Below, piece by piece: positions 35,992-57,418 of a stretch of 64,000 bases of DNA. Under the pieces are notes generated by a model, which had not been told where the DNA came from, made no database searches, and saw only the letters and a program-made list of their open reading frames with translations. Made by a program: the position numbers and the translations under genes. Position 1 is the first letter of the stretch. The number at the start of each line of letters is the position of its first letter. The DNA is taken from IMG/VR virus record IMGVR_UViG_3300037010_003311, positions 1 through 64,000 of that record; one strand, 5' to 3'.

Positions 35992-37584
35992 ATGGTAGGA
36001 AAAAAATATAAACTTGGAGAATCAAAAAAGTCCCAAGGAAGAACTCTTTTTAGAGTTGTAGCGTTAAGAGATTTCGGTGACGTAAAAGCAGGTGATATCG
36101 GTGGTTGGATAGAAACTGAAACTAACTTATCTCATAGTGGTGATTCTTGGGTCTATGATGAGGCCAGAGTTAGTGGTGATACTTGGGTCTATGGTAATGC
36201 CAAAATATCCAATAATGCACAGATATTCGGTAATGCCTGCATATATGGTAATACCAAAGTAGGGGATGAAGCTCAGGTATTTGGTAATGCCATCGTATAT
36301 GGTAATGCTTTGATATATGGTTCTACTCAGGTATTTGGTAATGTTGAAATATATGAGAATGCCCAAGTATTTGGTATGGCTAAAGCATACGATAATGTTC
36401 GTATATTTGGTTATGCATGGATTACCGGTAATACTCAAGTATATGGTAACACCATAGTTACCAAAGCGGTTAATACAATATACACTGGTGAGTATGATAT
36501 TATCATTACTGACAACTATATAAAGATTTGGTGGGAAAATCACCCAATCGACGTTTGGGAAGCATTTACCGACGAGCAGATAGCTGACATGGATACCGGA
36601 GCGCTAGCGTGGTGGAAAGTTTGGAAGCCAATTATATTTGATATAATACAAAAAGGAAATAATATGACATCACAAAAAGAAATTAAAAACTTCTGGGAAA
36701 AGATGCTTAATTACCGTATAAATAAAAATAACTCCAAAAAAGAAGGAAATAATATGATGCAATCAAATGAAATTAAAAACGAGAATAAAGCAATTGTACC
36801 AAAATATAAACTTGGTGAAGCAAAAACCTTTAATGTAAGAACTCTTTTTAGAGTTGAAGCTCTGAGATCATTTGGCAATGTGTCTACCGGTGATATCGGT
36901 GGCTGGATTGAAAACGAAGATAATTTGTCTCATAGTGGAGATGCTTGGGTCTATGACGAAGCTATGGTATATGGTAATGCTCGAGTGAGTAATGACGCAA
37001 TAGTGAGGGATAATGCCTGCATATATGGTAATACCAAAGTAGGGGATGAAGCTCAGGTATTTGGTAATGCCATCGTATATGGTAATGCTTGTATAAGTGA
37101 TAATGCTCAGGTATATGGTAATGCTCGTATAAGTGATGACGCCCAAGTATACGATACAGCTCATGTATTCGATAACGCATATATAATCGATAATGCTTGG
37201 ATAGGTAATAATGCAAGAGTATGTGGCAATGCGCGTATAACTGATGATTCGCGAGTATACGATAACGCATTGATTAGTGGTCATTCCTTGATTTCTGATA
37301 GGGCTTTGATATATGGCAATGCCCAGGTATTTGATAATGGCTTGGTTAAGGGTAATACCCATGTATGGGGTAACGCCGAAGTTACCAAAGCAGTTATTAC
37401 GATACATACCGATGCTTACAATATTACCATTACTGATAATTATATAACTATTGGGTTCGAAAATCACCCAATCGCTGATTGGGAAACATTTACTGATGAT
37501 GAAATATCCAAAATGGATGCAGGAGCGTTAGATTGGTGGCGAGTCTGGAAGCCAATTATATTTGCTATAATAAATGCTTATTAA
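35992..37584 (+). CDS. in-frame fusion of two capped hexapeptide-repeat genes
   Basis: two complete N-cap/repeat/C-cap units; former intergenic DNA with its RBS is read through; internal start near 36754. Confidence 0.85.
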   Translation: MVGKKYKLGESKKSQGRTLFRVVALRDFGDVKAGDIGGWIETETNLSHSGDSWVYDEARVSGDTWVYGNAKISNNAQIFGNACIYGNTKVGDEAQVFGNAIVYGNALIYGSTQVFGNVEIYENAQVFGMAKAYDNVRIFGYAWITGNTQVYGNTIVTKAVNTIYTGEYDIIITDNYIKIWWENHPIDVWEAFTDEQIADMDTGALAWWKVWKPIIFDIIQKGNNMTSQKEIKNFWEKMLNYRINKNNSKKEGNNMMQSNEIKNENKAIVPKYKLGEAKTFNVRTLFRVEALRSFGNVSTGDIGGWIENEDNLSHSGDAWVYDEAMVYGNARVSNDAIVRDNACIYGNTKVGDEAQVFGNAIVYGNACISDNAQVYGNARISDDAQVYDTAHVFDNAYIIDNAWIGNNARVCGNARITDDSRVYDNALISGHSLISDRALIYGNAQVFDNGLVKGNTHVWGNAEVTKAVITIHTDAYNITITDNYITIGFENHPIADWETFTDDEISKMDAGALDWWRVWKPIIFAIINAY

Positions 37585-46845: not shown

Positions 46846-47577
46846 ATGGCAAGTAAAGTTATTTCTACTTATTATATAGGAAATGTTCCAGTATATGCCG
46901 GAGCTCAAGGTGGTGCTCATACTCAAAATGGGTGCATGTTTAATTTTAACATCCGAGTTAAACCAGAAATCAATAATGTTGGGATTATGATTATTAAAAC
47001 GAATGATCCAATAATTCATAGTTATGATAATACAACTAGGGCTCCAGAATTCGAATTGGATCTTAGTAATCTCACAAAACTGATTACGCTTTTAAAAGTA
47101 AGAGGTTTCGCTAGCCCAACACAAGGAGCTCAGGAGTTTATTAAACTTGGAGTGACTACTCAAGCGAAATATGCAGACCGCATAAAAATGGCATGGGTTA
47201 AATCTTTTCAAGATACTACAACCTTTATAATTGAAACTAACGGTCAACAAGAAATGTTCGTGGTAGAAGGGATATTTCAAAATGAATATCTATTAGATGT
47301 ATTACAATCAACAAGAGAACTTTTAATTAGCTCTAAAGTAGCCGATGAAATAATCGTTACTCGTGGTACAACTAATAATGTTGGAAATTCGATGCCTGGT
47401 ATTCCAGGTGGAATAGGTATGTCACCAGTATCTACCGTTGGAACAATGTTACCAAACTTTACTGGAACTCCAGCGGCACCTACTGCTCCAGCGGCACCTA
47501 CTGCTCCAGCGGCACCTACTGCTCCAGCGGCACCAGCAATACCAGGTGTACCAAATATGCCTGGATTGCCGGCTTAA
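46846..47577 (+). CDS. hypothetical protein with Pro/Ala-rich tail; candidate Whirly/PC4-like ssDNA-binding protein
   Basis: SYD...FELDLSNLTKL segment; low-complexity tail. Confidence 0.4.
   Translation: MASKVISTYYIGNVPVYAGAQGGAHTQNGCMFNFNIRVKPEINNVGIMIIKTNDPIIHSYDNTTRAPEFELDLSNLTKLITLLKVRGFASPTQGAQEFIKLGVTTQAKYADRIKMAWVKSFQDTTTFIIETNGQQEMFVVEGIFQNEYLLDVLQSTRELLISSKVADEIIVTRGTTNNVGNSMPGIPGGIGMSPVSTVGTMLPNFTGTPAAPTAPAAPTAPAAPTAPAAPAIPGVPNMPGLPA
47468..47534 (+). repeat. 18-bp in-frame tandem repeat (PAAPTA, about 3.7 copies)
   Basis: CTCCAGCGGCACCTACTG repeated. Confidence 0.9.
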
Positions 47578-47610: not shown

Positions 47611-48378
47611 ATGTTAACCGAGCAAGATAAATTAAAAATCGTTTTAAAAAGTATGTCTAAAAAAAGATATAAAGCAGCGTTAAAAGAGCTTAACAATATT
47701 CCGTTATTTAAAGCTGATGGCAACTATCCGTTGTCGTTAGATGTTAGAGCTGTAATGGCGAATGAGGGTTCGATTGGTTTGGCTAAACTTTTAAGAGATA
47801 CGTTTAGATTTGATTTAACAGATCCAAACGTTAAAGATACCCCAAGTAGAGTAGCTAGTATGTGGGTAAATGAACTTATGGTTGGCAGATATACGGATAA
47901 ACCACGTCTGGAAGCATTTCCCGTCGAGGAAAAACATTTAAGTAAACATAGTATAGAAATGTTGCACGAAGATGCCTCTGTTTTAGAGTACGATGGGATA
48001 ATCATTAAAAAGATTGATGTTCGATCATTATGTTCGCATCATCTTATGCCTTTCTTTTCTGATGGTAAAAAGTCTTTTGCTTTAGTAGCTTATATACCAA
48101 CAACTAAGTTTTTAGGTATTAGTAAAATTCAACGTTTATCTAATTGGTATGGTGCAAGACCATCACTACAAGAGCAATTAACTTGGTCAATATATAAAGA
48201 GATGTGTGACACTCTTGGTACAGACGATGTATTTGTAATTATGAAAAACATTACACATACTTGCGAAACTCTACGTGGAGCTAAAACTGAAGATGGTAGT
48301 ACTACTACTATGTTCTATGGTGGAAAATTTAAAGATATCAAGAAACGTAATGAAGTAATCAATTTGGCAGCAGATTAA
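47611..48378 (+). CDS. folE: GTP cyclohydrolase I
   Basis: DTP.RVA, SLCSHHLMPF, GISKI.R, LQE, HTC..RG. Confidence 0.93.
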   Translation: MLTEQDKLKIVLKSMSKKRYKAALKELNNIPLFKADGNYPLSLDVRAVMANEGSIGLAKLLRDTFRFDLTDPNVKDTPSRVASMWVNELMVGRYTDKPRLEAFPVEEKHLSKHSIEMLHEDASVLEYDGIIIKKIDVRSLCSHHLMPFFSDGKKSFALVAYIPTTKFLGISKIQRLSNWYGARPSLQEQLTWSIYKEMCDTLGTDDVFVIMKNITHTCETLRGAKTEDGSTTTMFYGGKFKDIKKRNEVINLAAD

Positions 48379-48418
48379 TCGTTTAGGTTAAGTTATATCC
48401 AAATTAGAGGAGGTAATT

Positions 48419-48877
48419 ATGGAGAATAATGCAATTAATGATCTATGGTTTCTACCATTAGATTTCATTGAAAAGACCGAAAACGATAAGCGTTTAGTGT
48501 ATAGTGATACTGATTCTGTGGTGGGAAATTCAATTATTATAGTAAATGGTAAACCTATTAAAATTGAAGATTTTTATAATTCTTTACCTAATAACTATAT
48601 TGAAGAAAAAGATCATCACTTTGTAAAAAAAAGTGATGGTTTTGTAACGTTAACCGTTAATGATAATCATGAGCTCATAGATAAAGAAATTATTTATTGT
48701 ATGAAGCATTTAGTAAAAAAAAGATTTTTCCGAATTAAAACTGATACAAATGAAGTAATAATCACAGAGGATCATTCATTGATGGTTAAAAGAAATGGTT
48801 ATTTAATTGGTATAAAAGTTAAAGAACTGATGGAAGGTGATGAAATATATGAAATTTCAGAATCCCCCACTTTGTAG
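48419..48877 (+). CDS. family B DNA polymerase fragment (32-aa N-extein ending YSDTD) fused to split-intein N part
   Basis: YSDTD|SVVGNS block A, ITEDH block B; ORF ends after about 120 intein residues. Confidence 0.88.
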   Translation: MENNAINDLWFLPLDFIEKTENDKRLVYSDTDSVVGNSIIIVNGKPIKIEDFYNSLPNNYIEEKDHHFVKKSDGFVTLTVNDNHELIDKEIIYCMKHLVKKRFFRIKTDTNEVIITEDHSLMVKRNGYLIGIKVKELMEGDEIYEISESPTL

Positions 48878-49022
48878 AACGTGCTCTAATAAATTGATTG
48901 ATGATTCAATTTGGCAAAAATATATTAATGGTGAAACCGATCTAAAGGATAAAAAATTTTTCAATAATTTTTATTCTAAACTTAAAAAAAGGATATCAAA
49001 TGATATTAAAATTGAAAAATGA
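48849..49022 (+). CDS. small CxxC ORF between the split-intein halves (possible homing endonuclease remnant)
   Basis: MKFQNPPLCRTCSNKL; overlaps both flanking ORFs in a third frame. Confidence 0.45.
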   Translation: MKFQNPPLCRTCSNKLIDDSIWQKYINGETDLKDKKFFNNFYSKLKKRISNDIKIEK

Positions 49023-50004
49023 TTTTATAGTTGAAGATTTAGGTATTCGAGAAGAATGGGTTTATGATATAGAAGTTAAAGATAATCATAATTTCTTTGC
49101 AAATAATATCTTAGTACACAATTCCGCATATTTGCTATTCGATTTACCATTCAATAAATTTGATGATATCCGGCAACTGGTTGATTATATACAGCAGTTG
49201 TCGACTAAAATTGATACAGAATACAATAATGCTTTAAATTATTATGGTTCAATGTTTGCGGGGTTAAATCCTGAATTCAATATTATGAAATTTAAATCAG
49301 AAGTTGTAGCGTATCAAGGCTTCTTCAACACCAAAAAGTTTTATGCATTGAGTAAAGCTTGGGACGAAGGAGCTTTCTTTGATACGCCAGAAATTAAAAA
49401 GACCGGTGGCCAAATTAAGAAAGCAGACGTTACTAAGATATCGGAACAGCTTTTATCCTTAGTCTATAAAATACTTGTTTTACCATCAGAAACTAAAGAT
49501 CTTGAGTCATTATATAAAAAGATCTTTATTGAGACTAAAAACCGTATTAAAATGCAACTAAAGCATGATATAGATAATCTTGATTTTAAAAGTTTCGGTG
49601 TACCAAAAAAATGGAGTTTTAAAGCTACAAAAGATATGCAGTGGGTAACCGGTGCAAGATTGTATAATCAAATAGTGGAGGATCTTCACCGCCCTGGAGA
49701 TTCAATGTTAACTCTTCCAATTAAAGGGAATTTTAACATTCTTCAAAACTATGATGAACAATTATCTTTAAAAAATAAAGATTTAACTTATCTACTTAAA
49801 GCTGATGATTATAATGATATATCTACTTTAAGTATTCCACCGAATATGAATTCTGAACAAGTACAAAAACTATCAGCGGCATTTGAAAAATATTCAATTC
49901 GAGTAGATTTTGATCAGGTAATGTTATTTAATATAGATATGAAATTGGAAGTATTTGAAAAACTATTTCCCCCAGAAATTAAATTATTGGTAAAGGGAGA
50001 TTGA
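49000..50004 (+). CDS. split-intein C part (41 aa) fused to family B DNA polymerase C-terminal palm/thumb
   Basis: own AAAGGA RBS; VYDIEV..NHNFFANNILVHN|SAY; downstream FKSE and KKFY PolB-like motifs. Confidence 0.88.
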   Translation: MILKLKNDFIVEDLGIREEWVYDIEVKDNHNFFANNILVHNSAYLLFDLPFNKFDDIRQLVDYIQQLSTKIDTEYNNALNYYGSMFAGLNPEFNIMKFKSEVVAYQGFFNTKKFYALSKAWDEGAFFDTPEIKKTGGQIKKADVTKISEQLLSLVYKILVLPSETKDLESLYKKIFIETKNRIKMQLKHDIDNLDFKSFGVPKKWSFKATKDMQWVTGARLYNQIVEDLHRPGDSMLTLPIKGNFNILQNYDEQLSLKNKDLTYLLKADDYNDISTLSIPPNMNSEQVQKLSAAFEKYSIRVDFDQVMLFNIDMKLEVFEKLFPPEIKLLVKGD

Positions 50005-51089
50005 TGTTAATAGATCCTGCGAATACTCATATTTGTACCCCAGAACTTTATCAACAGTTAATGGATATGATTAAAAAACAACAAATTGCATTTCATCAAT
50101 TTTATAACGTTGAGATAGAAACTGATGAATTACCATTTCTAAATTTCATGCAAACCTATAAAGATAATCAAGCTACAAAGGTTTTAAATAAAACCTACTA
50201 CGATATCGAAACTTATGGTGTCAATGAAAATGGTGAAATAGTAGATGAATTCCCGGAAGTAGATAAAGCTGCGTTTCCAGTAAACGCTGTAGCCTTATAT
50301 AACAATATTACTAATGAAGCTACCATTATATCTTATGTAAATGATTGTAACATTACTGATCCAGTAGCTTTACAAGCTGGGGTTGAAGAATACTATGCTA
50401 AAACGGTCATAGAAAATCCAATCTATGAAATTCAAGATTTAAAAATCATAGTCGAAATAGTTGAAAATGAAAAACAACTTTTCCAATCATTTCATACCAA
50501 AATTCATTCGTTAGATACACTAATGTTGATTGGATTCAATAGTTCATTATTCGATGATGTATATATGATGAATAGAGGATCTAAGCTTTTTGGTGAGGAA
50601 GTATATCATAGTATGGTTTCAGAATTTCAAGTTACCAAATATAGTAGCCGGGTATTTGAGTGGCCAGATTATCTTTTGGTTGATCTATTAAAACTATACC
50701 AACCAGTTGATTCTGGTGGTATGGGCCTAGGCCAATCATTATCAAGTTATAAGCTAGATAATATTGCCGAAGTTGAATTAGGTATACAAAAATTAGATCT
50801 TGATGGGGGTTTCGTAAAAACCTATAGAACCAACATCGTTCAATATTTGACATACAACCTGATGGATACACTATTGACTTTTAAATTAGATCAAAAACTT
50901 CAATTTATTGAGCAAATTTATAGCTTATCGAAGTATAATAATTCGTCGATTGGTGCAACTATTAATGGTCGGTCAATCATGTATAAATATAGAAACGATC
51001 TTATTTATGCTAATCAAAAAAAATTGATCCGTGCTAAAAAATATTCTAGGGAAGTTTTTTATCAGATTGAAAAGGAGGTTAAAAAGTGA
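50004..51089 (+). CDS. family B DNA polymerase 3'-5' exonuclease domain as a separate gene
   Basis: ExoI YDIET, ExoII GFNS..FD..Y, YKLD.IA..ELG..K, ExoIII YN..D. Confidence 0.88.
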   Translation: MLIDPANTHICTPELYQQLMDMIKKQQIAFHQFYNVEIETDELPFLNFMQTYKDNQATKVLNKTYYDIETYGVNENGEIVDEFPEVDKAAFPVNAVALYNNITNEATIISYVNDCNITDPVALQAGVEEYYAKTVIENPIYEIQDLKIIVEIVENEKQLFQSFHTKIHSLDTLMLIGFNSSLFDDVYMMNRGSKLFGEEVYHSMVSEFQVTKYSSRVFEWPDYLLVDLLKLYQPVDSGGMGLGQSLSSYKLDNIAEVELGIQKLDLDGGFVKTYRTNIVQYLTYNLMDTLLTFKLDQKLQFIEQIYSLSKYNNSSIGATINGRSIMYKYRNDLIYANQKKLIRAKKYSREVFYQIEKEVKK

Positions 51090-51529
51090 AACAACTTGGA
51101 TCCGAGAATTTAACTATAATTGATAAATTAGAAAATATTAATAAGTTAACTTCCGATATAGACCAAAATATAAAACTGTGTAAATCAATTATAACAGTAA
51201 ATAATAAAGTCTCCGAGGATACATTAGAGCTCATCGAATCTATAAATTTAGATATTGATAAGCTTAAACAAGAGCAATTTTATATACTCGAAAATAATTA
51301 TAATTCAAAACTAACGTTCCGTGGCATCGAATATCGAGTATTAGAATTGATTAAAATTAAAGAAGCGTTAAAAGCTAAAATGGATGCAATTATTGATTAT
51401 TTAAAAGTCATGGAAGATCAGGAGATTGATCAATACCACCTTAGAGTCCAAACCTTATTAAATACAATAAAAACGGAATACCGAGATATAAATAGAGTGT
51501 TGTATCTCCACAATACTAAAAAGGCTTAG
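51086..51529 (+). CDS. coiled-coil hypothetical protein
   Basis: GTG after AGGAGG. Confidence 0.6.
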   Translation: MKQLGSENLTIIDKLENINKLTSDIDQNIKLCKSIITVNNKVSEDTLELIESINLDIDKLKQEQFYILENNYNSKLTFRGIEYRVLELIKIKEALKAKMDAIIDYLKVMEDQEIDQYHLRVQTLLNTIKTEYRDINRVLYLHNTKKA

Positions 51530-51540
51530 AAAGGCGCAAG

Positions 51541-52383
51541 ATGAAAGAAAACGAAAAAAATAGATTCGAGTTAAGTGAAAGGGATCCATATCTTTCACAA
51601 ACTTTTTATAGCTTAGAGGGTGAAGGAATGACTCTAGGGCGAACAGCTTTATTCTTAAGAATAAATGGTTGTAATGCTACTTGTACATTCTGTGACACAA
51701 GTTTTAGTATCAAGGGTGAAGAAAAATATAATCTTGTAAATATGGCAGAACCAGAATTTGTGGATTATCTTCGTAAAGAATACCAGCATCTTGATATTGA
51801 ACATGTGAATTCTATTACTATAACCGGTGGTGAACCACTTAAAAATATTAAACAGTTTAATAGAATGTTTAAAAATATTCTACATGTGTTTCCTAAAGTG
51901 GAGCATGTAATATTCGAAACTAATGGTACCTACCTAAGTTCGACTAGTAACTGTTTAAAGCTATTACGAGAAATTGGAGAATTTATTAATATAGATCAGA
52001 TTAACTTTACTTTAAGTATCAGTCCAAAACTATCCAGTAAAATGAGCTGGAGTAAAACAGATGATGCTGAAGTTTTATCTTGGTATAACGATATTCTTCA
52101 TAATTATAAATATTATCTAAATCGTTATTTAGATATACAAATGAAGTTTATTCAATTTCCAAATGATAGTGAATACTTTAATTTGAATCAAAATCTAATA
52201 AATTTATGTAAGGAATACAATATTCCAAACTATAAGATATTGATTATGCCTTTTACTCCACCAGATCCACTTGGTAAAGATAGTGCTATTTGGACAGAAT
52301 CTAAAGATACTGCGGCGAGATATGCGTTAAAGCATAATTTTAGATACAGTCCTCGTATCCATATTGATCGCAAATTGGATTAA
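51541..52383 (+). CDS. queE: 7-carboxy-7-deazaguanine synthase (radical SAM)
   Basis: FYSLEGEG, FLR..GCNxxCxFCDT, TGGEP, ETNG, ISPK, SPRIH. Confidence 0.92.
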   Translation: MKENEKNRFELSERDPYLSQTFYSLEGEGMTLGRTALFLRINGCNATCTFCDTSFSIKGEEKYNLVNMAEPEFVDYLRKEYQHLDIEHVNSITITGGEPLKNIKQFNRMFKNILHVFPKVEHVIFETNGTYLSSTSNCLKLLREIGEFINIDQINFTLSISPKLSSKMSWSKTDDAEVLSWYNDILHNYKYYLNRYLDIQMKFIQFPNDSEYFNLNQNLINLCKEYNIPNYKILIMPFTPPDPLGKDSAIWTESKDTAARYALKHNFRYSPRIHIDRKLD

Positions 52384-54189: not shown

Positions 54190-54942
54190 ATGACAGGATT
54201 ACCAGGGGCGGGAATACCAGGACAAGGTGTACCACAATATCAACAACAGGTACCATCATCATATCAACAAGTTGGTGTACCACAAGCTACGGTGCCAATG
54301 CAACAAGCTACGGTGCCAATGCAACCAATGCAACAAGCTACGGTGCCAATGCAACCAATGCAACAAGCTACGGTGCCAAGCAACGGATTACCAGGACCGA
54401 CGAATACTAGTACCTACCGAAATTTAATTACTGTAGGAACTATTACCCATACTGGTAACCAACTATTTGAAATTAATGGTAGAATTGATATTACCGATAA
54501 ATTCCCAGATGAATTTGCGTTTGTTTGGATTGCACCATCAGTTATTAATAATACTAAACAATCAAATAGAAGTTATGTATTGACTGATAAAATTAATATG
54601 AAATTCAGTTCAGAAGAGTTGCATGGATTAGCAGAAGCTTTAACAGAAGCTGGTATGTGGGGACGTTGTTCTTTTATTAAATTTAGTGATCCAAAAAAAT
54701 CGGGGTCGAACAATAACACTACCTCAAATGATTCAAAAAAGTTTACTGTTACTGCAAGCGTAGAAGGTGATAAAGTTAAAGTATTTATGAACATCATACA
54801 GGGTTCTAAAAAAATAGCTATGCCATTAGAAAAGTATACCGCATTAGGTTTAGCTCATCAAATACATGATTTAGCTACGGAAATTAATAGAATGAAATTT
54901 GAGCTAGATAGAGAAAGAGCAAAAAATTTTATTAAACAATAG
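54190..54942 (+). CDS. candidate Whirly-like ssDNA-binding protein with Gln/Pro-rich N-terminus
   Basis: IAP..RSY...K..MKFS..E, F.DP.K, KKFTV, IAMPL in the same order as plant Whirly motifs. Confidence 0.55.
   Translation: MTGLPGAGIPGQGVPQYQQQVPSSYQQVGVPQATVPMQQATVPMQPMQQATVPMQPMQQATVPSNGLPGPTNTSTYRNLITVGTITHTGNQLFEINGRIDITDKFPDEFAFVWIAPSVINNTKQSNRSYVLTDKINMKFSSEELHGLAEALTEAGMWGRCSFIKFSDPKKSGSNNNTTSNDSKKFTVTASVEGDKVKVFMNIIQGSKKIAMPLEKYTALGLAHQIHDLATEINRMKFELDRERAKNFIKQ
54283..54379 (+). repeat. in-frame 21/30-bp tandem repeat (QQATVPM(QPM))
   Basis: CAAGCTACGGTGCCAA four times. Confidence 0.9.
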
Positions 54943-55433: not shown

Positions 55434-55865
55434 TTGATAGATTTAAAAATGAGTGAAACAGAAGTATCTCCACCAGCAATTGCGGAAGTAAATGCCTCTA
55501 CCGATTTAGATACTGGTGGGAAATATACAAAGATTATAAATCTTACGAATCATAAACTAACGGAAATTCTTAGTGGGATCCAAATTGATTTCTCTGAGAG
55601 TGGCGTAGCTAGAGTTGATTGTAGAGATGAAATCATTTATCGTGATCCATCTGGTTATACAATTTCTCGTACAAAATATGTACATATTGTTGGCATCGAT
55701 TTGGATAATATTAATCCAAATCATTTATACATAGTTTCAGCTGTGGTATTGAATGCCATTCGTGAACGTGGATTACAATTTGATAATATTGTGGCACCAG
55801 CTAAAATCATTAGGGATAGTGATAACAACGTTATTGCGGCTAGGGGGTTCCGAGTAAATGGTTAA
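55434..55865 (+). CDS. phage hypothetical protein
   Basis: NLT.H, SGVARV, YIVS, RD..N.I...GF motifs. Confidence 0.65.
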   Translation: MIDLKMSETEVSPPAIAEVNASTDLDTGGKYTKIINLTNHKLTEILSGIQIDFSESGVARVDCRDEIIYRDPSGYTISRTKYVHIVGIDLDNINPNHLYIVSAVVLNAIRERGLQFDNIVAPAKIIRDSDNNVIAARGFRVNG

Positions 55866-57418
55866 TGGAAAAGTTAAAATTAGAAATTGAGCAAAAATTA
55901 TTCAATTCCAGGAACCGAATCGATTATGTATATTTGAAAAAATATCCAGAAATCTTAAATCGGGCCCAAGAGCATATGACTGGATTTGATGATAAGATTA
56001 CTTCATCTCAATTAGTTTTATTTTTTTACGAAGGTATATTGTCACCACCTAAGTGTCAGAACGCACATTGTGAAAAATATGTTAAGTGGTGGTCGAATAA
56101 AAAATGCTTTTCCAAATATTGTTGCATAAAATGTAGTAATTCTGATCCAGAAAAAGATCAAACAACTATTAAAAATAATATGGAAAAATATGGTGTACCA
56201 AGAGCATCTATGACCACTGAATCTAAACAGAAACTTTTAAATACTAATTTGTGCCGGTATGGTGTAAGTAGTACCGCTCAATTAAAAGAAGTAAAAGATA
56301 AAGCTAAACAAACCTGTTTAAAAAAGTATAATTATATATCAAGTTCTATATCCGATATAAAAAATCTGGAAGAATATTCTAATCGGGATTTTATAATTGA
56401 AAATTTTATAAACGATAATATTTTTGATTTATATGGATTTCGAAATTATTTTAATTGTGGTCAAGTTGCTGCTCATAATACTTTAAACCGCTTAAATATT
56501 GATTATAATAAGTACGCGGCAAGAAATACTTTTATAGAGCGGATCGTTGAAGATTTTTTAAAAGAAAATAATATAACTTTTATCAAAAATGATAGAATGG
56601 TTCTTAATGGTAAAGAACTTGATTTCTATTTACCAGAGCATAAGCTTGGAGTAGAATTAAATGGTTTATATTGGCATAGTTATAATACAAAAACAAAAAT
56701 TTTAAAATCAAAAAAAGATATTAAAAATTTTCACCGTATTAAAACCGATAGATGTGAAGAACAGAATATACAACTTTTTCATATATTCGAAAATGAAATT
56801 CTTTATAAGTTTGAGATATGGAAATCAGTATTAGAAAACACTCTTGGTAGAAGCATACAACTAGAAGCCGAGGATCATACTATTAAGCCGGTACCCAAAT
56901 ATGATATAAAACCATTTCTAGAAGCTAATCACTTACAAGGTTACTGCTCAAGTTCAATTGCTTATGGTCTGTATTATAATAACAATAATACTGGAATACC
57001 AGAGCTAATAAGCATTATGACTTTTACTAAAGGTAGTGGAAGTGCTGATTGGGAGCTAATGCGATTTTGTAATAAACTTGGTTATAATGTTTATGGTGCA
57101 GCAAGCAGATTGCTTAAAGCATTTCGGGTTGGGTACAAAGGAAATATTAAAACCTGTGTAAATAGGCGCTGGTCGAATGGTAACTTATACCGACAACTTG
57201 GTTTCCAAGAAATTGGTATAAGTGAACCGAATAAATTCATTATTAATTTTAATAAGATTAATAATTTATATAGTAGACTAGCTTTTCAAAAATACAAATT
57301 GCCAAAAAATTCAAATTTCGATAATACTTTATCAGCTGATGAAAATATCATAAATAATGGTTATGGAATCATTTGGGATTCTGGTCAAATAAATTTTATC
57401 TTAAAAGGAGATATATGA
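55865..57418 (+). CDS. Hef-like free-standing homing endonuclease with C-terminal GNAT-like region
   Basis: N-terminal Cys cluster, KYG repeats, ELDFY..GVELNGLYWHS nuclease motif, NHLQG..ELMRF..GAASRL..LGF..WDSG. Confidence 0.75.
   Translation: MEKLKLEIEQKLFNSRNRIDYVYLKKYPEILNRAQEHMTGFDDKITSSQLVLFFYEGILSPPKCQNAHCEKYVKWWSNKKCFSKYCCIKCSNSDPEKDQTTIKNNMEKYGVPRASMTTESKQKLLNTNLCRYGVSSTAQLKEVKDKAKQTCLKKYNYISSSISDIKNLEEYSNRDFIIENFINDNIFDLYGFRNYFNCGQVAAHNTLNRLNIDYNKYAARNTFIERIVEDFLKENNITFIKNDRMVLNGKELDFYLPEHKLGVELNGLYWHSYNTKTKILKSKKDIKNFHRIKTDRCEEQNIQLFHIFENEILYKFEIWKSVLENTLGRSIQLEAEDHTIKPVPKYDIKPFLEANHLQGYCSSSIAYGLYYNNNNTGIPELISIMTFTKGSGSADWELMRFCNKLGYNVYGAASRLLKAFRVGYKGNIKTCVNRRWSNGNLYRQLGFQEIGISEPNKFIINFNKINNLYSRLAFQKYKLPKNSNFDNTLSADENIINNGYGIIWDSGQINFILKGDI

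What the first reader, a model, noticed from the sequence alone, without database searches (positions are those of the whole stretch)
48419..51089. Family B polymerase broken into at least four genes in permuted order
Seen: the order is motif-C peptide + IntN, then IntC + palm/thumb, then the 3'-5' exonuclease domain, which is normally N-terminal. No ORF in the window shows motif A (DxxSLYP) or motif B (KxxxNSxYG), so another piece should lie elsewhere. Two-part PolB genes are known in some T4-like and phiKZ-like phages; this degree of fragmentation implies a multi-subunit enzyme assembled both covalently and non-covalently (inference).
Basis: partly seen in the sequence, partly recalled or inferred. 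Interest (0 to 1): 0.7.

Follow-up and report, generated by a model that had tools for sequence, protein, structure and literature searches.

The report
Phage DNA polymerase in four genes
An uncultured jumbo phage from microbial mats encodes its only replicative (family B) DNA polymerase as four separate genes in scrambled order, two of which are probably stitched together by a split intein, and the three-subunit layout is shared by a large group of uncultured relatives.

Summary
The window is the first 64 kb of a 226,657-bp viral record. It holds three polymerase genes:
- 48419-48877: a 32-residue motif-C peptide plus an N-intein.
- 49000-50004: a C-intein plus the rest of the palm and the thumb.
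- 50001-51089: the 3'-5' exonuclease domain.

The motif A/B gene (414 aa) lies 39 kb downstream, at genome 88,924-90,168. A T4-type PolB profile tiles these pieces once, without overlap. No other polymerase was found.

The fragmentation is not private to this phage. More than 100 protein clusters of stand-alone motif-A/B subunits exist. In all six related contigs that carry every piece, the thumb gene lies upstream of the exonuclease gene and the A/B gene lies 7-73 kb away.

The intein is of the known Aes123 PolB1 type (serine at both splice junctions, insertion at DTD|S). It is polymorphic among relatives: absent, contiguous or split. The 61-aa ORF between the halves is an internally deleted homing endonuclease.

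Best reading: a working three-subunit PolB, one subunit made by trans-splicing. Assembly and splicing are inferred; the co-folding run was formally inconclusive. This is a new variant of a known kind.

The parts
48406..48413 (+). Shine-Dalgarno sequence (AGAGGAGG) 5 nt upstream of the ATG of the first polymerase gene
   Evidence: Read directly from the sequence.
48419..48514 (+). N-extein: 32 residues ending ...LVYSDTD, i.e. the beta-strand and first half of PolB motif C (both metal-binding Asp, D30 and D32)
   Evidence: It is colinear with the N-termini of intein-less thumb subunits of relatives up to DTD|S. Y28, D30, T31, D32 and S33 are invariant in that alignment.
48515..48877 (+). N-intein: 120 residues. 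Ser1 is S33, block B TxxH is T116-H119, and His97 sits in a conserved MKH motif. The stop codon is included.
   Evidence: Pfam PF14890 2.9e-6, below the gathering score. Solved intein 9hth 1.8e-24. 45-46% identity to the Aeromonas phage Aes123/Aes508 split-intein polymerase pieces.
48837..49022 (+). [quoted passage not shown]
   Evidence: Residues 1-29 match residues 1-29 (E 2e-5), and residues 14-53 match residues 338-371 (E 4e-5), of the 373-aa endonuclease that sits between the intein halves in relative G006. No Pfam or PHROG family matches. The spacer RNA fold is unremarkable.
49000..49122 (+). C-intein: 41 residues, with blocks F and G (...VYDIEV...NILVHN)
   Evidence: PF14890 positions 132-155, E 1e-5. 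9hth 3.5e-8 and PolB16 intein 5e-5. Its own AAGGA plus ATG start was read from the sequence.
49123..50004 (+). C-extein: 293 residues starting at Ser+1 (S42). It holds the second half of motif C, the KKxY motif (K112, K113, Y115), the rest of the palm, the thumb and the C-terminal tail. The stop codon is included.
   Evidence: phrog_262 positions 581-793, 4e-14. The AlphaFold model aligns residues 38-334 to RB69 gp43 620-896, Z 12.3-13.3. 33 columns are invariant among 30 relatives.
50001..51089 (+). Exonuclease subunit (reduced N-terminal domain plus 3'-5' exonuclease), 361-362 aa. Exo I is D68/E70, Exo II is N180/F184/D185, Exo III is Y285/D289. The start overlaps the upstream stop (TGATG).
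   Evidence: PF03104 above its cut-off. RB69 gp43 residues 120-351, 1.8e-13. Catalytic residues are invariant in 15 relatives. The nearest database representatives are stand-alone proteins of 345-365 aa.

Best explanation
This is the phage's single replicative family B DNA polymerase. It is encoded as four genes that yield three polypeptides.

1. Exonuclease subunit (about 361 aa): a reduced N-terminal domain plus the proofreading domain, equivalent to RB69 gp43 roughly up to residue 380.
2. Palm-N/fingers subunit (414 aa), encoded 39 kb away at genome 88,924-90,168. It carries motif A (D42-ARSLYPT) and motif B (K353-TTLNTGYG) and corresponds to RB69 385-612. It also has a helical insertion of about 145 residues after motif A and an enlarged finger tip.
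3. Palm-C/thumb subunit (325 aa), equivalent to RB69 from before motif C to about 896.

The third subunit is made from two precursors of 152 and 334 aa. A class-1 split intein with Ser1 and Ser+1 (Aes123 PolB1 type) associates, excises itself and joins D32 to S42. This restores YSDTD-S, motif C. Because the splice site lies inside the catalytic motif, splicing is obligatory for activity.

The three polypeptides then assemble non-covalently. The palm sheet and active site are composite: motif A comes from one chain and motif C from another.

What is shown: the identity, completeness, uniqueness and conservation of the pieces; the ancestral thumb-before-exonuclease gene order; and the mobility of the intein. 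What is inferred: trans-splicing, heterotrimer formation and activity.

Likely history:
- An older break between fingers and motif C, with the thumb gene first. A two-subunit sister group shares this.
- A second break between the exonuclease domain and the palm, with relocation of the A/B gene.
- Invasion of the DTD|S site by an intein, which a free-standing homing endonuclease then split.
- Decay of that endonuclease to a 61-aa remnant in this phage.
For: Completeness and uniqueness:
- phrog_262 tiles once over the record, at 102-350 / 378-554 / 581-793.
- Motifs A, B and C each occur once.
- There is no PolA beyond a chance-level hit, no DnaE and no second PolB or Hint domain.

Fold:
- The A/B model (pLDDT 82.5) aligns to RB69 385-612, Z 8.7.
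- The thumb model aligns to RB69 620-896, Z up to 13.3.
- The exonuclease piece aligns to RB69 120-351.

Selection:
- Catalytic residues are invariant in alignments of 25, 30 and 15 relatives.
- There are 113 clusters of stand-alone A/B subunits of 390-459 aa, plus two shorter fragments, and 231 clusters of thumb subunits. The nearest exonuclease representatives are stand-alone proteins of 345-365 aa.

Synteny:
- G002, G003, G004, G006 and G007 all have the thumb gene upstream of the exonuclease gene and the A/B gene 7-73 kb away. In G004 the A/B gene is on the other strand.
- The two near-complete records (100% and 97%) have exactly these three pieces.
- The two-subunit sister group also has the thumb gene first.

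Intein:
- All splicing blocks are present.
- Homologous Aes123 PolB1 and PolB16 inteins are experimentally active split inteins (PMC11923092, PMC10189870).
- Intein-less alleles read straight through DTDS.

Expression signals: each gene has its own ribosome-binding site and start codon, and the thumb stop overlaps the exonuclease start.

Not an artefact: contigs from three other runs are identical.
Against: - No direct evidence exists of expression, splicing, assembly or activity.
- The co-folding job scored the A/B chain 0.81-0.84 against the other chains and 0.00 for unrelated partners. It scored 0.81 when the exonuclease chain was replaced by an unrelated protein. The tool's verdict is 'no answer', and the run says nothing about exonuclease docking.
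- The record is estimated to be only 81% complete, so a further polymerase in the missing part cannot be strictly excluded.
- Pfam PF00136 hits the A/B piece only weakly (16 bits). The A/B piece has no hit in PDB by sequence or in isolated phages.
- In G002 and G003 two unrelated genes separate thumb and exonuclease, so translational coupling is not universal.
- The exonuclease piece is about 46 residues shorter at its N-terminus than RB69. A separate N-terminal-domain piece was not searched for.
Confidence: 0.82

Rival explanations
1. The polymerase core is a two-part enzyme (A/B subunit plus spliced thumb subunit). The exonuclease protein is not a stable subunit: it acts as a free or transiently recruited 3'-5' nuclease, for example a dissociable proofreader or a nuclease with another role.
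For: Replacing the exonuclease chain with an unrelated protein left the co-folding score of the A/B chain unchanged (0.81 against 0.82). The only signal in that formally inconclusive run therefore does not involve the exonuclease chain. In G002 and G003 the exonuclease gene is separated from the thumb gene by ThyX-like and ClpP-like genes.
Against: The exonuclease piece keeps the N-terminal-domain segments that pack against the palm in RB69, including about 60 residues after Exo III. In the sister group it is fused to the A/B part in one chain of 666-709 aa. In this phage, G004, G006 and G007 its gene directly follows the thumb gene; its start overlaps the upstream stop in this phage and G006, while short gaps separate the two genes in G004 and G007.
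Confidence: 0.12
2. The pieces are decaying relics of a polymerase gene that mobile elements broke up, and the phage relies on a host polymerase or another polymerase.
For: The locus carries mobile-element debris: a split intein and an endonuclease remnant. The record is only 81% complete.
Against: All catalytic residues are intact and invariant across dozens of diverged relatives at 35-70% identity. Subunit termini are conserved. The same three pieces, and no other PolB, occur in the 97% and 100% complete relatives. No PolA or DnaE was found.
Confidence: 0.03
3. The apparent split and permutation are artefacts of assembly or sequencing: frameshifts within a contiguous intein, or a chimeric contig.
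For: This is a single metagenomic record, and the three ORFs around the intein lie in three different frames.
Against: Contigs from three other runs are identical, without indels, across 48300-49157, and X3 also covers 49290-50204. The same gene order appears in six independent related contigs. A relative carries a full endonuclease gene in exactly the spacer position.
Confidence: 0.02

Closest known systems
Aes123 PolB1 / Aes508-type split intein in the gp43 DNA polymerase of T4-like Aeromonas phages (parent of the engineered cysteine-less 'CL' intein); related solved inteins 9hth and PolB16 OarG
   Same: Same insertion site (DTD|S in motif C), Ser1 and Ser+1 chemistry, and a canonical split into an N-intein of about 120 aa and a C-intein of about 40 aa. 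Identity to the N-piece is 45-46% (PMC11923092, PMC10189870).
   Different: There the polymerase is otherwise one colinear gene: a long N-piece holding the exonuclease domain and motifs A and B, with an intact VSR-type endonuclease gene between the halves. Here the N-extein is only 32 residues, the endonuclease is a 61-aa remnant, and the rest of the enzyme is in two further genes.
Tenacibaculum jumbo phage PTm1 (Shirahamavirus) three-gene PolB
   Same: A jumbo phage of about 225 kb whose PolB lies in several genes, with the same split intein at motif C (36% identity). It is annotated 'intein-containing split DNA polymerase precursor'.
   Different: PTm1's pieces are colinear: ORF236 (N-terminal domain, exonuclease domain and motif A), ORF239 (motif B, motif C N-half and IntN), ORF241 (IntC and thumb). 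Its non-intein break lies between motifs A and B. There is no stand-alone exonuclease subunit and no permutation.
PhiKZ (chimallivirus) two-subunit PolB, DNAP-N gp82 + DNAP-C gp50
   Same: A family B polymerase of a jumbo phage made of separately encoded subunits at distant loci, with the active site composed from two chains. A stable 1:1 active complex was shown by cryo-EM (PMC13648687). It also has a large helical insertion just after motif A.
   Different: PhiKZ has one break, inside the palm insertion after motif A, and no intein. Its exonuclease domain is fused to the N-part of the palm. This phage has T4-like gene content (topoisomerase II, RIIB, ligase). Its breaks lie at RB69 ~352-385 and ~612, plus the intein at 623/624.
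Split gp43 (43A/43B) of Aeromonas phages 44RR and 25
   Same: A T4-related PolB split into two cistrons whose products co-purify and are active (PMC2988022, citing Petrov et al. 2010).
   Different: Two colinear, adjacent cistrons. There is no separate exonuclease subunit and no permutation.
'Fractured genes' (Dassa et al. 2009): split intein with a free-standing homing endonuclease between the halves
   Same: Relative G006 has exactly this layout, IntN piece - 373-aa endonuclease - IntC piece. The window's locus matches the model's later step, loss of the endonuclease (PMC2677866).
   Different: In the window the endonuclease is reduced to a 61-aa head-plus-tail ORF. The host gene is itself only one of three subunit genes.

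Membership tests
Family B DNA polymerase (T4/RB69 gp43 type) | 3'-5' exonuclease motifs Exo I (DxE), Exo II (NxxxFD), Exo III (YxxxD) | tested here: met
   D68/E70, N180/F184/D185 and Y285/D289 in ORF 50001-51089. They are invariant or nearly invariant in 15 relatives. PF03104 is above its cut-off.
Family B DNA polymerase (T4/RB69 gp43 type) | Motif A (DxxSLYPS) and motif B (KxxxNSxYG) | tested here: met
   D42-ARSLYPT and K353-TTLNTGYG in the 414-aa ORF at genome 88,924-90,168. D42, L46, Y47, P48, K353, N357, Y360 and G361 are invariant in 25 relatives. phrog_262 positions 378-554, 1.7e-17. In motif B, Ser is replaced by Thr.
Family B DNA polymerase (T4/RB69 gp43 type) | Motif C (YxDTDS) and the KKxY motif | tested here: met
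   YSDTD ends the N-extein and S42 begins the C-extein. Intein-less relatives read YSDTDS without interruption. K112, K113 and Y115 are invariant.
Family B DNA polymerase (T4/RB69 gp43 type) | Palm, fingers and thumb fold | tested here: met
   The A/B model aligns to RB69 385-612 (Z 8.7; about 200 of 414 residues aligned; the rest is insertion). The thumb model aligns to RB69 620-896 (Z 12.3-13.3).
Family B DNA polymerase (T4/RB69 gp43 type) | Polymerase and proofreading activity of the assembled enzyme | not testable with these tools
   The co-folding run gave 'no answer'. Biochemistry is required.
Class 1 split intein, Aes123 PolB1 type | Block A nucleophile at residue 1, block B TxxH, blocks F and G with terminal HN, and a nucleophile at +1 | tested here: met
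   S33 is intein Ser1. T116-E-D-H119 is block B. The C-intein ends ...NILVHN and is followed by S42.
Class 1 split intein, Aes123 PolB1 type | The two halves are separate translation units, with nothing of the Hint fold missing | tested here: met
   The N-intein has its own stop and the C-intein its own ribosome-binding site and ATG, in different frames. 120 + 41 = 161 residues, against 160-180 for contiguous alleles at the same site. The sequence is identical in three other runs.
Class 1 split intein, Aes123 PolB1 type | Protein trans-splicing activity | not testable with these tools
   Inferred from homology to experimentally active inteins (PMC11923092, PMC10189870).
Fractured gene sensu Dassa et al. 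2009 | A functional free-standing homing endonuclease gene between the two intein halves | tested here: not met
   Only a 61-aa ORF remains, matching the head and tail of the 373-aa endonuclease of G006. It has no family hit.
PhiKZ-type two-subunit PolB | A single break inside the palm insertion after motif A, with the exonuclease domain fused to motif A | tested here: not met
   The breaks here lie before motif A (exonuclease | A/B) and after motif B (A/B | thumb). The phiKZ layout is taken from PMC13648687.

The most novel reading that the evidence does not exclude
A large, uncultured clade of T4-like jumbo phages replicates with an obligate heterotrimeric family B polymerase. Proofreading, nucleotide selection (motif A and fingers) and catalysis with DNA grip (motif C and thumb) sit on three separate polypeptides. 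The conserved 'thumb gene first' order may reflect an assembly pathway. A stand-alone exonuclease subunit would allow its occupancy, and hence fidelity, to be regulated. In some members a mobile split intein adds a post-translational gate on active-site formation.
Probability: 0.2. Interest if true: 0.75.

Novelty: new variant of a known kind. Interest (0 to 1): 0.6.

Why it matters
Family B replicases are textbook single-chain enzymes. Known split versions have two parts: phiKZ, Aeromonas phages 44RR and 25, and some archaea.

Here the same fold is cut at both major domain boundaries, so the proofreading domain is a separate protein and the palm active site is built from two chains. The subunit genes are scrambled and dispersed, yet the layout is stable across more than a hundred diverged lineages.

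This gives:
- A natural test of how much covalent connectivity a PolB needs.
- Natural breakpoints for engineering split polymerases.
- Further Ser1/Ser+1 (cysteine-independent) split inteins, with matched intein-less, contiguous and split alleles.
- A caution for annotation. The A/B subunit escapes Pfam thresholds and BLAST against isolated phages, so such genomes can look polymerase-less or as if they hold only fragments.

Tried and rejected
- Megablast of the locus against isolated phages gave no match. tblastn of the A/B piece against isolated phages also gave none.
- phmmer of the A/B piece against PDB gave only a chance hit. Plain Foldseek of its model was weak (E about 0.07, although probability was 0.97-1.0 for RB69). 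The VIA second look gave the usable mapping.
- The search for related loci with the single A/B protein found nothing. An alignment was needed.
- Co-folding of four chains (exonuclease; N-extein 1-32; C-extein 42-233, truncated to fit 1000 residues; A/B) returned 'no answer'. It is not used as evidence.
- Cluster look-up of NCBI-sourced homologues returned no names.
- A gp45 clamp Pfam search found nothing, which is uninformative.
- The weak PolA hit in a 1,921-aa frame (13.6 bits) was judged to be chance.
- Read-through or frameshift joining of the intein halves was rejected. There are several stops, three different frames, and a remnant endonuclease ORF in between.
- RNA structure in the spacer is not above shuffles (z -0.55).
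- Promoter and terminator scans were not above shuffles.
- Pfam found nothing on ten neighbouring ORFs.
- Literature searches for a three-part or fragmented phage PolB found no description of this layout. The library excludes most subscription journals, so this is weak evidence of novelty.
Full report
**Setting.** The window is bases 1-64,000 of a 226,657-bp IMG/VR viral record with an estimated completeness of 81%. GC content is about 32%. Gene content is T4-like: a split topoisomerase II, RIIB, an ATP-dependent ligase and a homing endonuclease. Public runs holding the sequence are microbial-mat and sediment metagenomes.

**Observation.** Three consecutive + strand ORFs carry PolB parts.

- ORF 48419-48877 (152 aa) has a 32-residue N-extein ending YSDTD, followed by a 120-residue N-intein. 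The intein begins at Ser33 and has block B at T116-H119. It matches Pfam Intein_splicing at 2.9e-6, below the gathering score, phrog_27191 'DNA polymerase' at 5e-29, and the solved intein 9hth at 1.8e-24.
- ORF 49000-50004 (334 aa) starts with a 41-residue C-intein (...NILVHN), then Ser42 and 292 further residues. These match the T4-type profile phrog_262 at positions 581-793.
- ORF 50001-51089 (362 aa) is the exonuclease domain. PF03104 scores above its cut-off, and the ORF aligns to RB69 gp43 residues 120-351 at 1.8e-13.

Each gene has its own ribosome-binding site. The thumb gene's TGA stop overlaps the exonuclease gene's ATG (TGATG), which suggests translational coupling.

**The missing piece.** Motif A and motif B each occur once in the whole record. 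Both lie in a 414-aa ORF at genome 88,924-90,168, on the + strand and 39 kb downstream. phrog_262 tiles the record exactly once: exonuclease piece at 102-350, A/B piece at 378-554, C-extein at 581-793. There is no second PolB, only a chance-level PolA hit, no DnaE, and no Hint domain other than the two halves.

Structure models map the A/B piece to RB69 gp43 385-612 (Z 8.7; about 200 residues aligned). They map the C-extein to RB69 620-896 (Z up to 13.3). The whole of gp43 is therefore covered. The breaks fall at the exonuclease/palm boundary, at the fingers/palm boundary, and inside motif C at the equivalent of D623|S624.

By secondary structure, the A/B subunit also carries a helical insertion of about 145 residues after motif A and a larger finger tip. 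Neither has a convincing structural match.

**Not an artefact and not a relic.** Contigs from three other runs, from different samples and studies, are identical without indels across the N-intein stop, the spacer and the C-intein start. One of them also covers the thumb/exonuclease junction. Catalytic residues are invariant across diverged relatives:
- Exo I-III.
- Motifs A and B.
- DTD|S, KKxY and others.

**Relatives.**
- The A/B subunit has 113 homologous clusters, almost all stand-alone proteins of 390-459 aa, on contigs of up to 296 kb.
- The thumb subunit has 231 clusters.
- The nearest exonuclease representatives are stand-alone proteins of 345-365 aa.

In all five IMG/VR records that hold all the pieces, the thumb gene lies upstream of the exonuclease gene on the same strand. 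The two genes are either adjacent (G004, G006, G007) or separated by ThyX-like and ClpP-like genes (G002, G003). The A/B gene lies 7-73 kb away, and in G004 it is on the other strand. The 100% and 97% complete records have just these three pieces. The permuted three-subunit layout is therefore ancestral to a sizeable uncultured clade.

A more distant tier has exonuclease and A/B fused in one chain of 666-709 aa. That chain ends at the same C-terminal breakpoint, and a separate 316-aa thumb gene again lies upstream. The fingers|motif-C break and the thumb-first order are thus older than the exonuclease|palm break.

**The intein.** Among the best 120 thumb-subunit clusters:
- 71 lack an intein.
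- 34 have a contiguous mini-intein at DTD|S. All of these use Ser1 and are about 160-180 aa.
- About 10 are split.

A maximum-likelihood tree of the C-exteins needs at least 16 changes of state. Near-identical exteins occur with and without the intein. The window's allele is sister (support 99/98) to intein-less alleles at about 71% identity. The intein is therefore a mobile, polymorphic insert.

Relative G006 has the same four-gene layout, but with a 373-aa free-standing endonuclease between the halves. The window's 61-aa ORF (48837-49022) matches both the first 29 and the last ~34 residues of that endonuclease (E 2e-5 and 4e-5 in pairwise comparison). It is an internally deleted remnant. This corresponds to the endonuclease-loss step in the 'fractured genes' model (PMC2677866).

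The intein belongs with the Aes123/Aes508 PolB split inteins of Aeromonas phages and with 9hth and PolB16. These are experimentally active cysteine-independent split inteins (PMC11923092, PMC10189870).

**Mechanism (inferred).**
1. The two precursors associate through the intein halves.
2. Ser33 starts an N-O acyl shift, Ser42 attacks, and Asn41 cyclises.
3. This leaves a 325-residue thumb subunit with an intact YSDTDS. Both metal-binding aspartates sit on the 32-residue N-extein, so an unspliced enzyme cannot be active.
4. The A/B subunit supplies motif A, the steric-gate region and the fingers. The exonuclease subunit supplies proofreading.

Non-covalent assembly is supported only indirectly: by conservation, co-occurrence, partial translational coupling, the fused sister-group proteins, and precedent from phiKZ (PMC13648687) and phages 44RR and 25 (PMC2988022).

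It scored 0.81 when the exonuclease chain was swapped for an unrelated protein. The tool's verdict is 'no answer', and I do not count the run as evidence.

**Comparison and novelty.**
- The intein is a member of a known family.
- Two-part PolBs are known.
- PTm1 has a colinear three-gene PolB with different breakpoints.

Three things appear to be undescribed in the searchable literature (coverage is limited): a stand-alone exonuclease subunit plus a stand-alone motif-A/B subunit plus a thumb subunit; the conserved thumb-first, dispersed gene order; and the spread of this layout over more than 100 lineages. I rate this a new variant of a known kind, with interest 0.6.

Noticed in passing
window 47611-48378 and 51541-52383: A GTP cyclohydrolase I gene (PF01227, 5.7e-35) and a QueE-like radical-SAM gene (PF04055/PF13353) flank the polymerase genes. 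This suggests 7-deazaguanine DNA modification. A QueE-like gene also follows the exonuclease gene in relative G003, and QueC precedes the polymerase in Campylobacter phage F379.
   Followed up: partly
window 55865-57418: A 517-aa free-standing homing endonuclease (phrog_3339, 6e-95). It is not detectably related to the endonuclease that splits the intein in G006.
   Followed up: partly
window 46846-47577 and 54190-54942: Two ORFs with low-complexity tandem peptide repeats: PAAPTA-type at the C-terminus of one, and QQATVPMQPM-type near the N-terminus of the other. Neither has a Pfam family.
   Followed up: no
window 35992-37584: A 530-aa protein containing three copies of a PHROG domain of unknown function (phrog_5070, 2.8e-130, three stretches).
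   Followed up: no
L022 3492-4554 (relative G003): The ThyX-like gene between the thumb and exonuclease genes appears as two ORFs (196 and 168 aa). In G002 it is one 262-aa ORF. This may be another split gene.
   Followed up: no
protein P0275 (839 aa, sister group): A fused exonuclease+A/B protein carries a contiguous intein inside motif A (DLDAS|...VHN|TSLYPS). This is a second intein insertion site in this polymerase lineage.
   Followed up: no
proteins P0154 and P0254: These thumb-subunit genes have the N-terminal part of the homing endonuclease fused in frame to the C-intein. That N-terminus resembles the window's 61-aa remnant.
   Followed up: no
G007:C1:26625-27659: The exonuclease-subunit match in this relative contains four in-frame stops (2 TGA, 2 TAA). 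The cause may be an insertion, an intron or a broken copy.
   Followed up: no
whole window and genome: GC skew is positive in every 2-kb bin of the window. By my ORF selection, all but one of the long ORFs (300 aa or more) up to about 96 kb are on the + strand and all of them from about 98 kb onwards are on the - strand. This indicates two large divergent or convergent gene blocks.
   Followed up: no
window 48300-51200, runs X2 and X4: Co-occurring variant strains appear in other mat and sediment samples, with up to 12-13 differences per ~200 nt in the thumb and exonuclease genes. A related strain population is therefore present.
   Followed up: no
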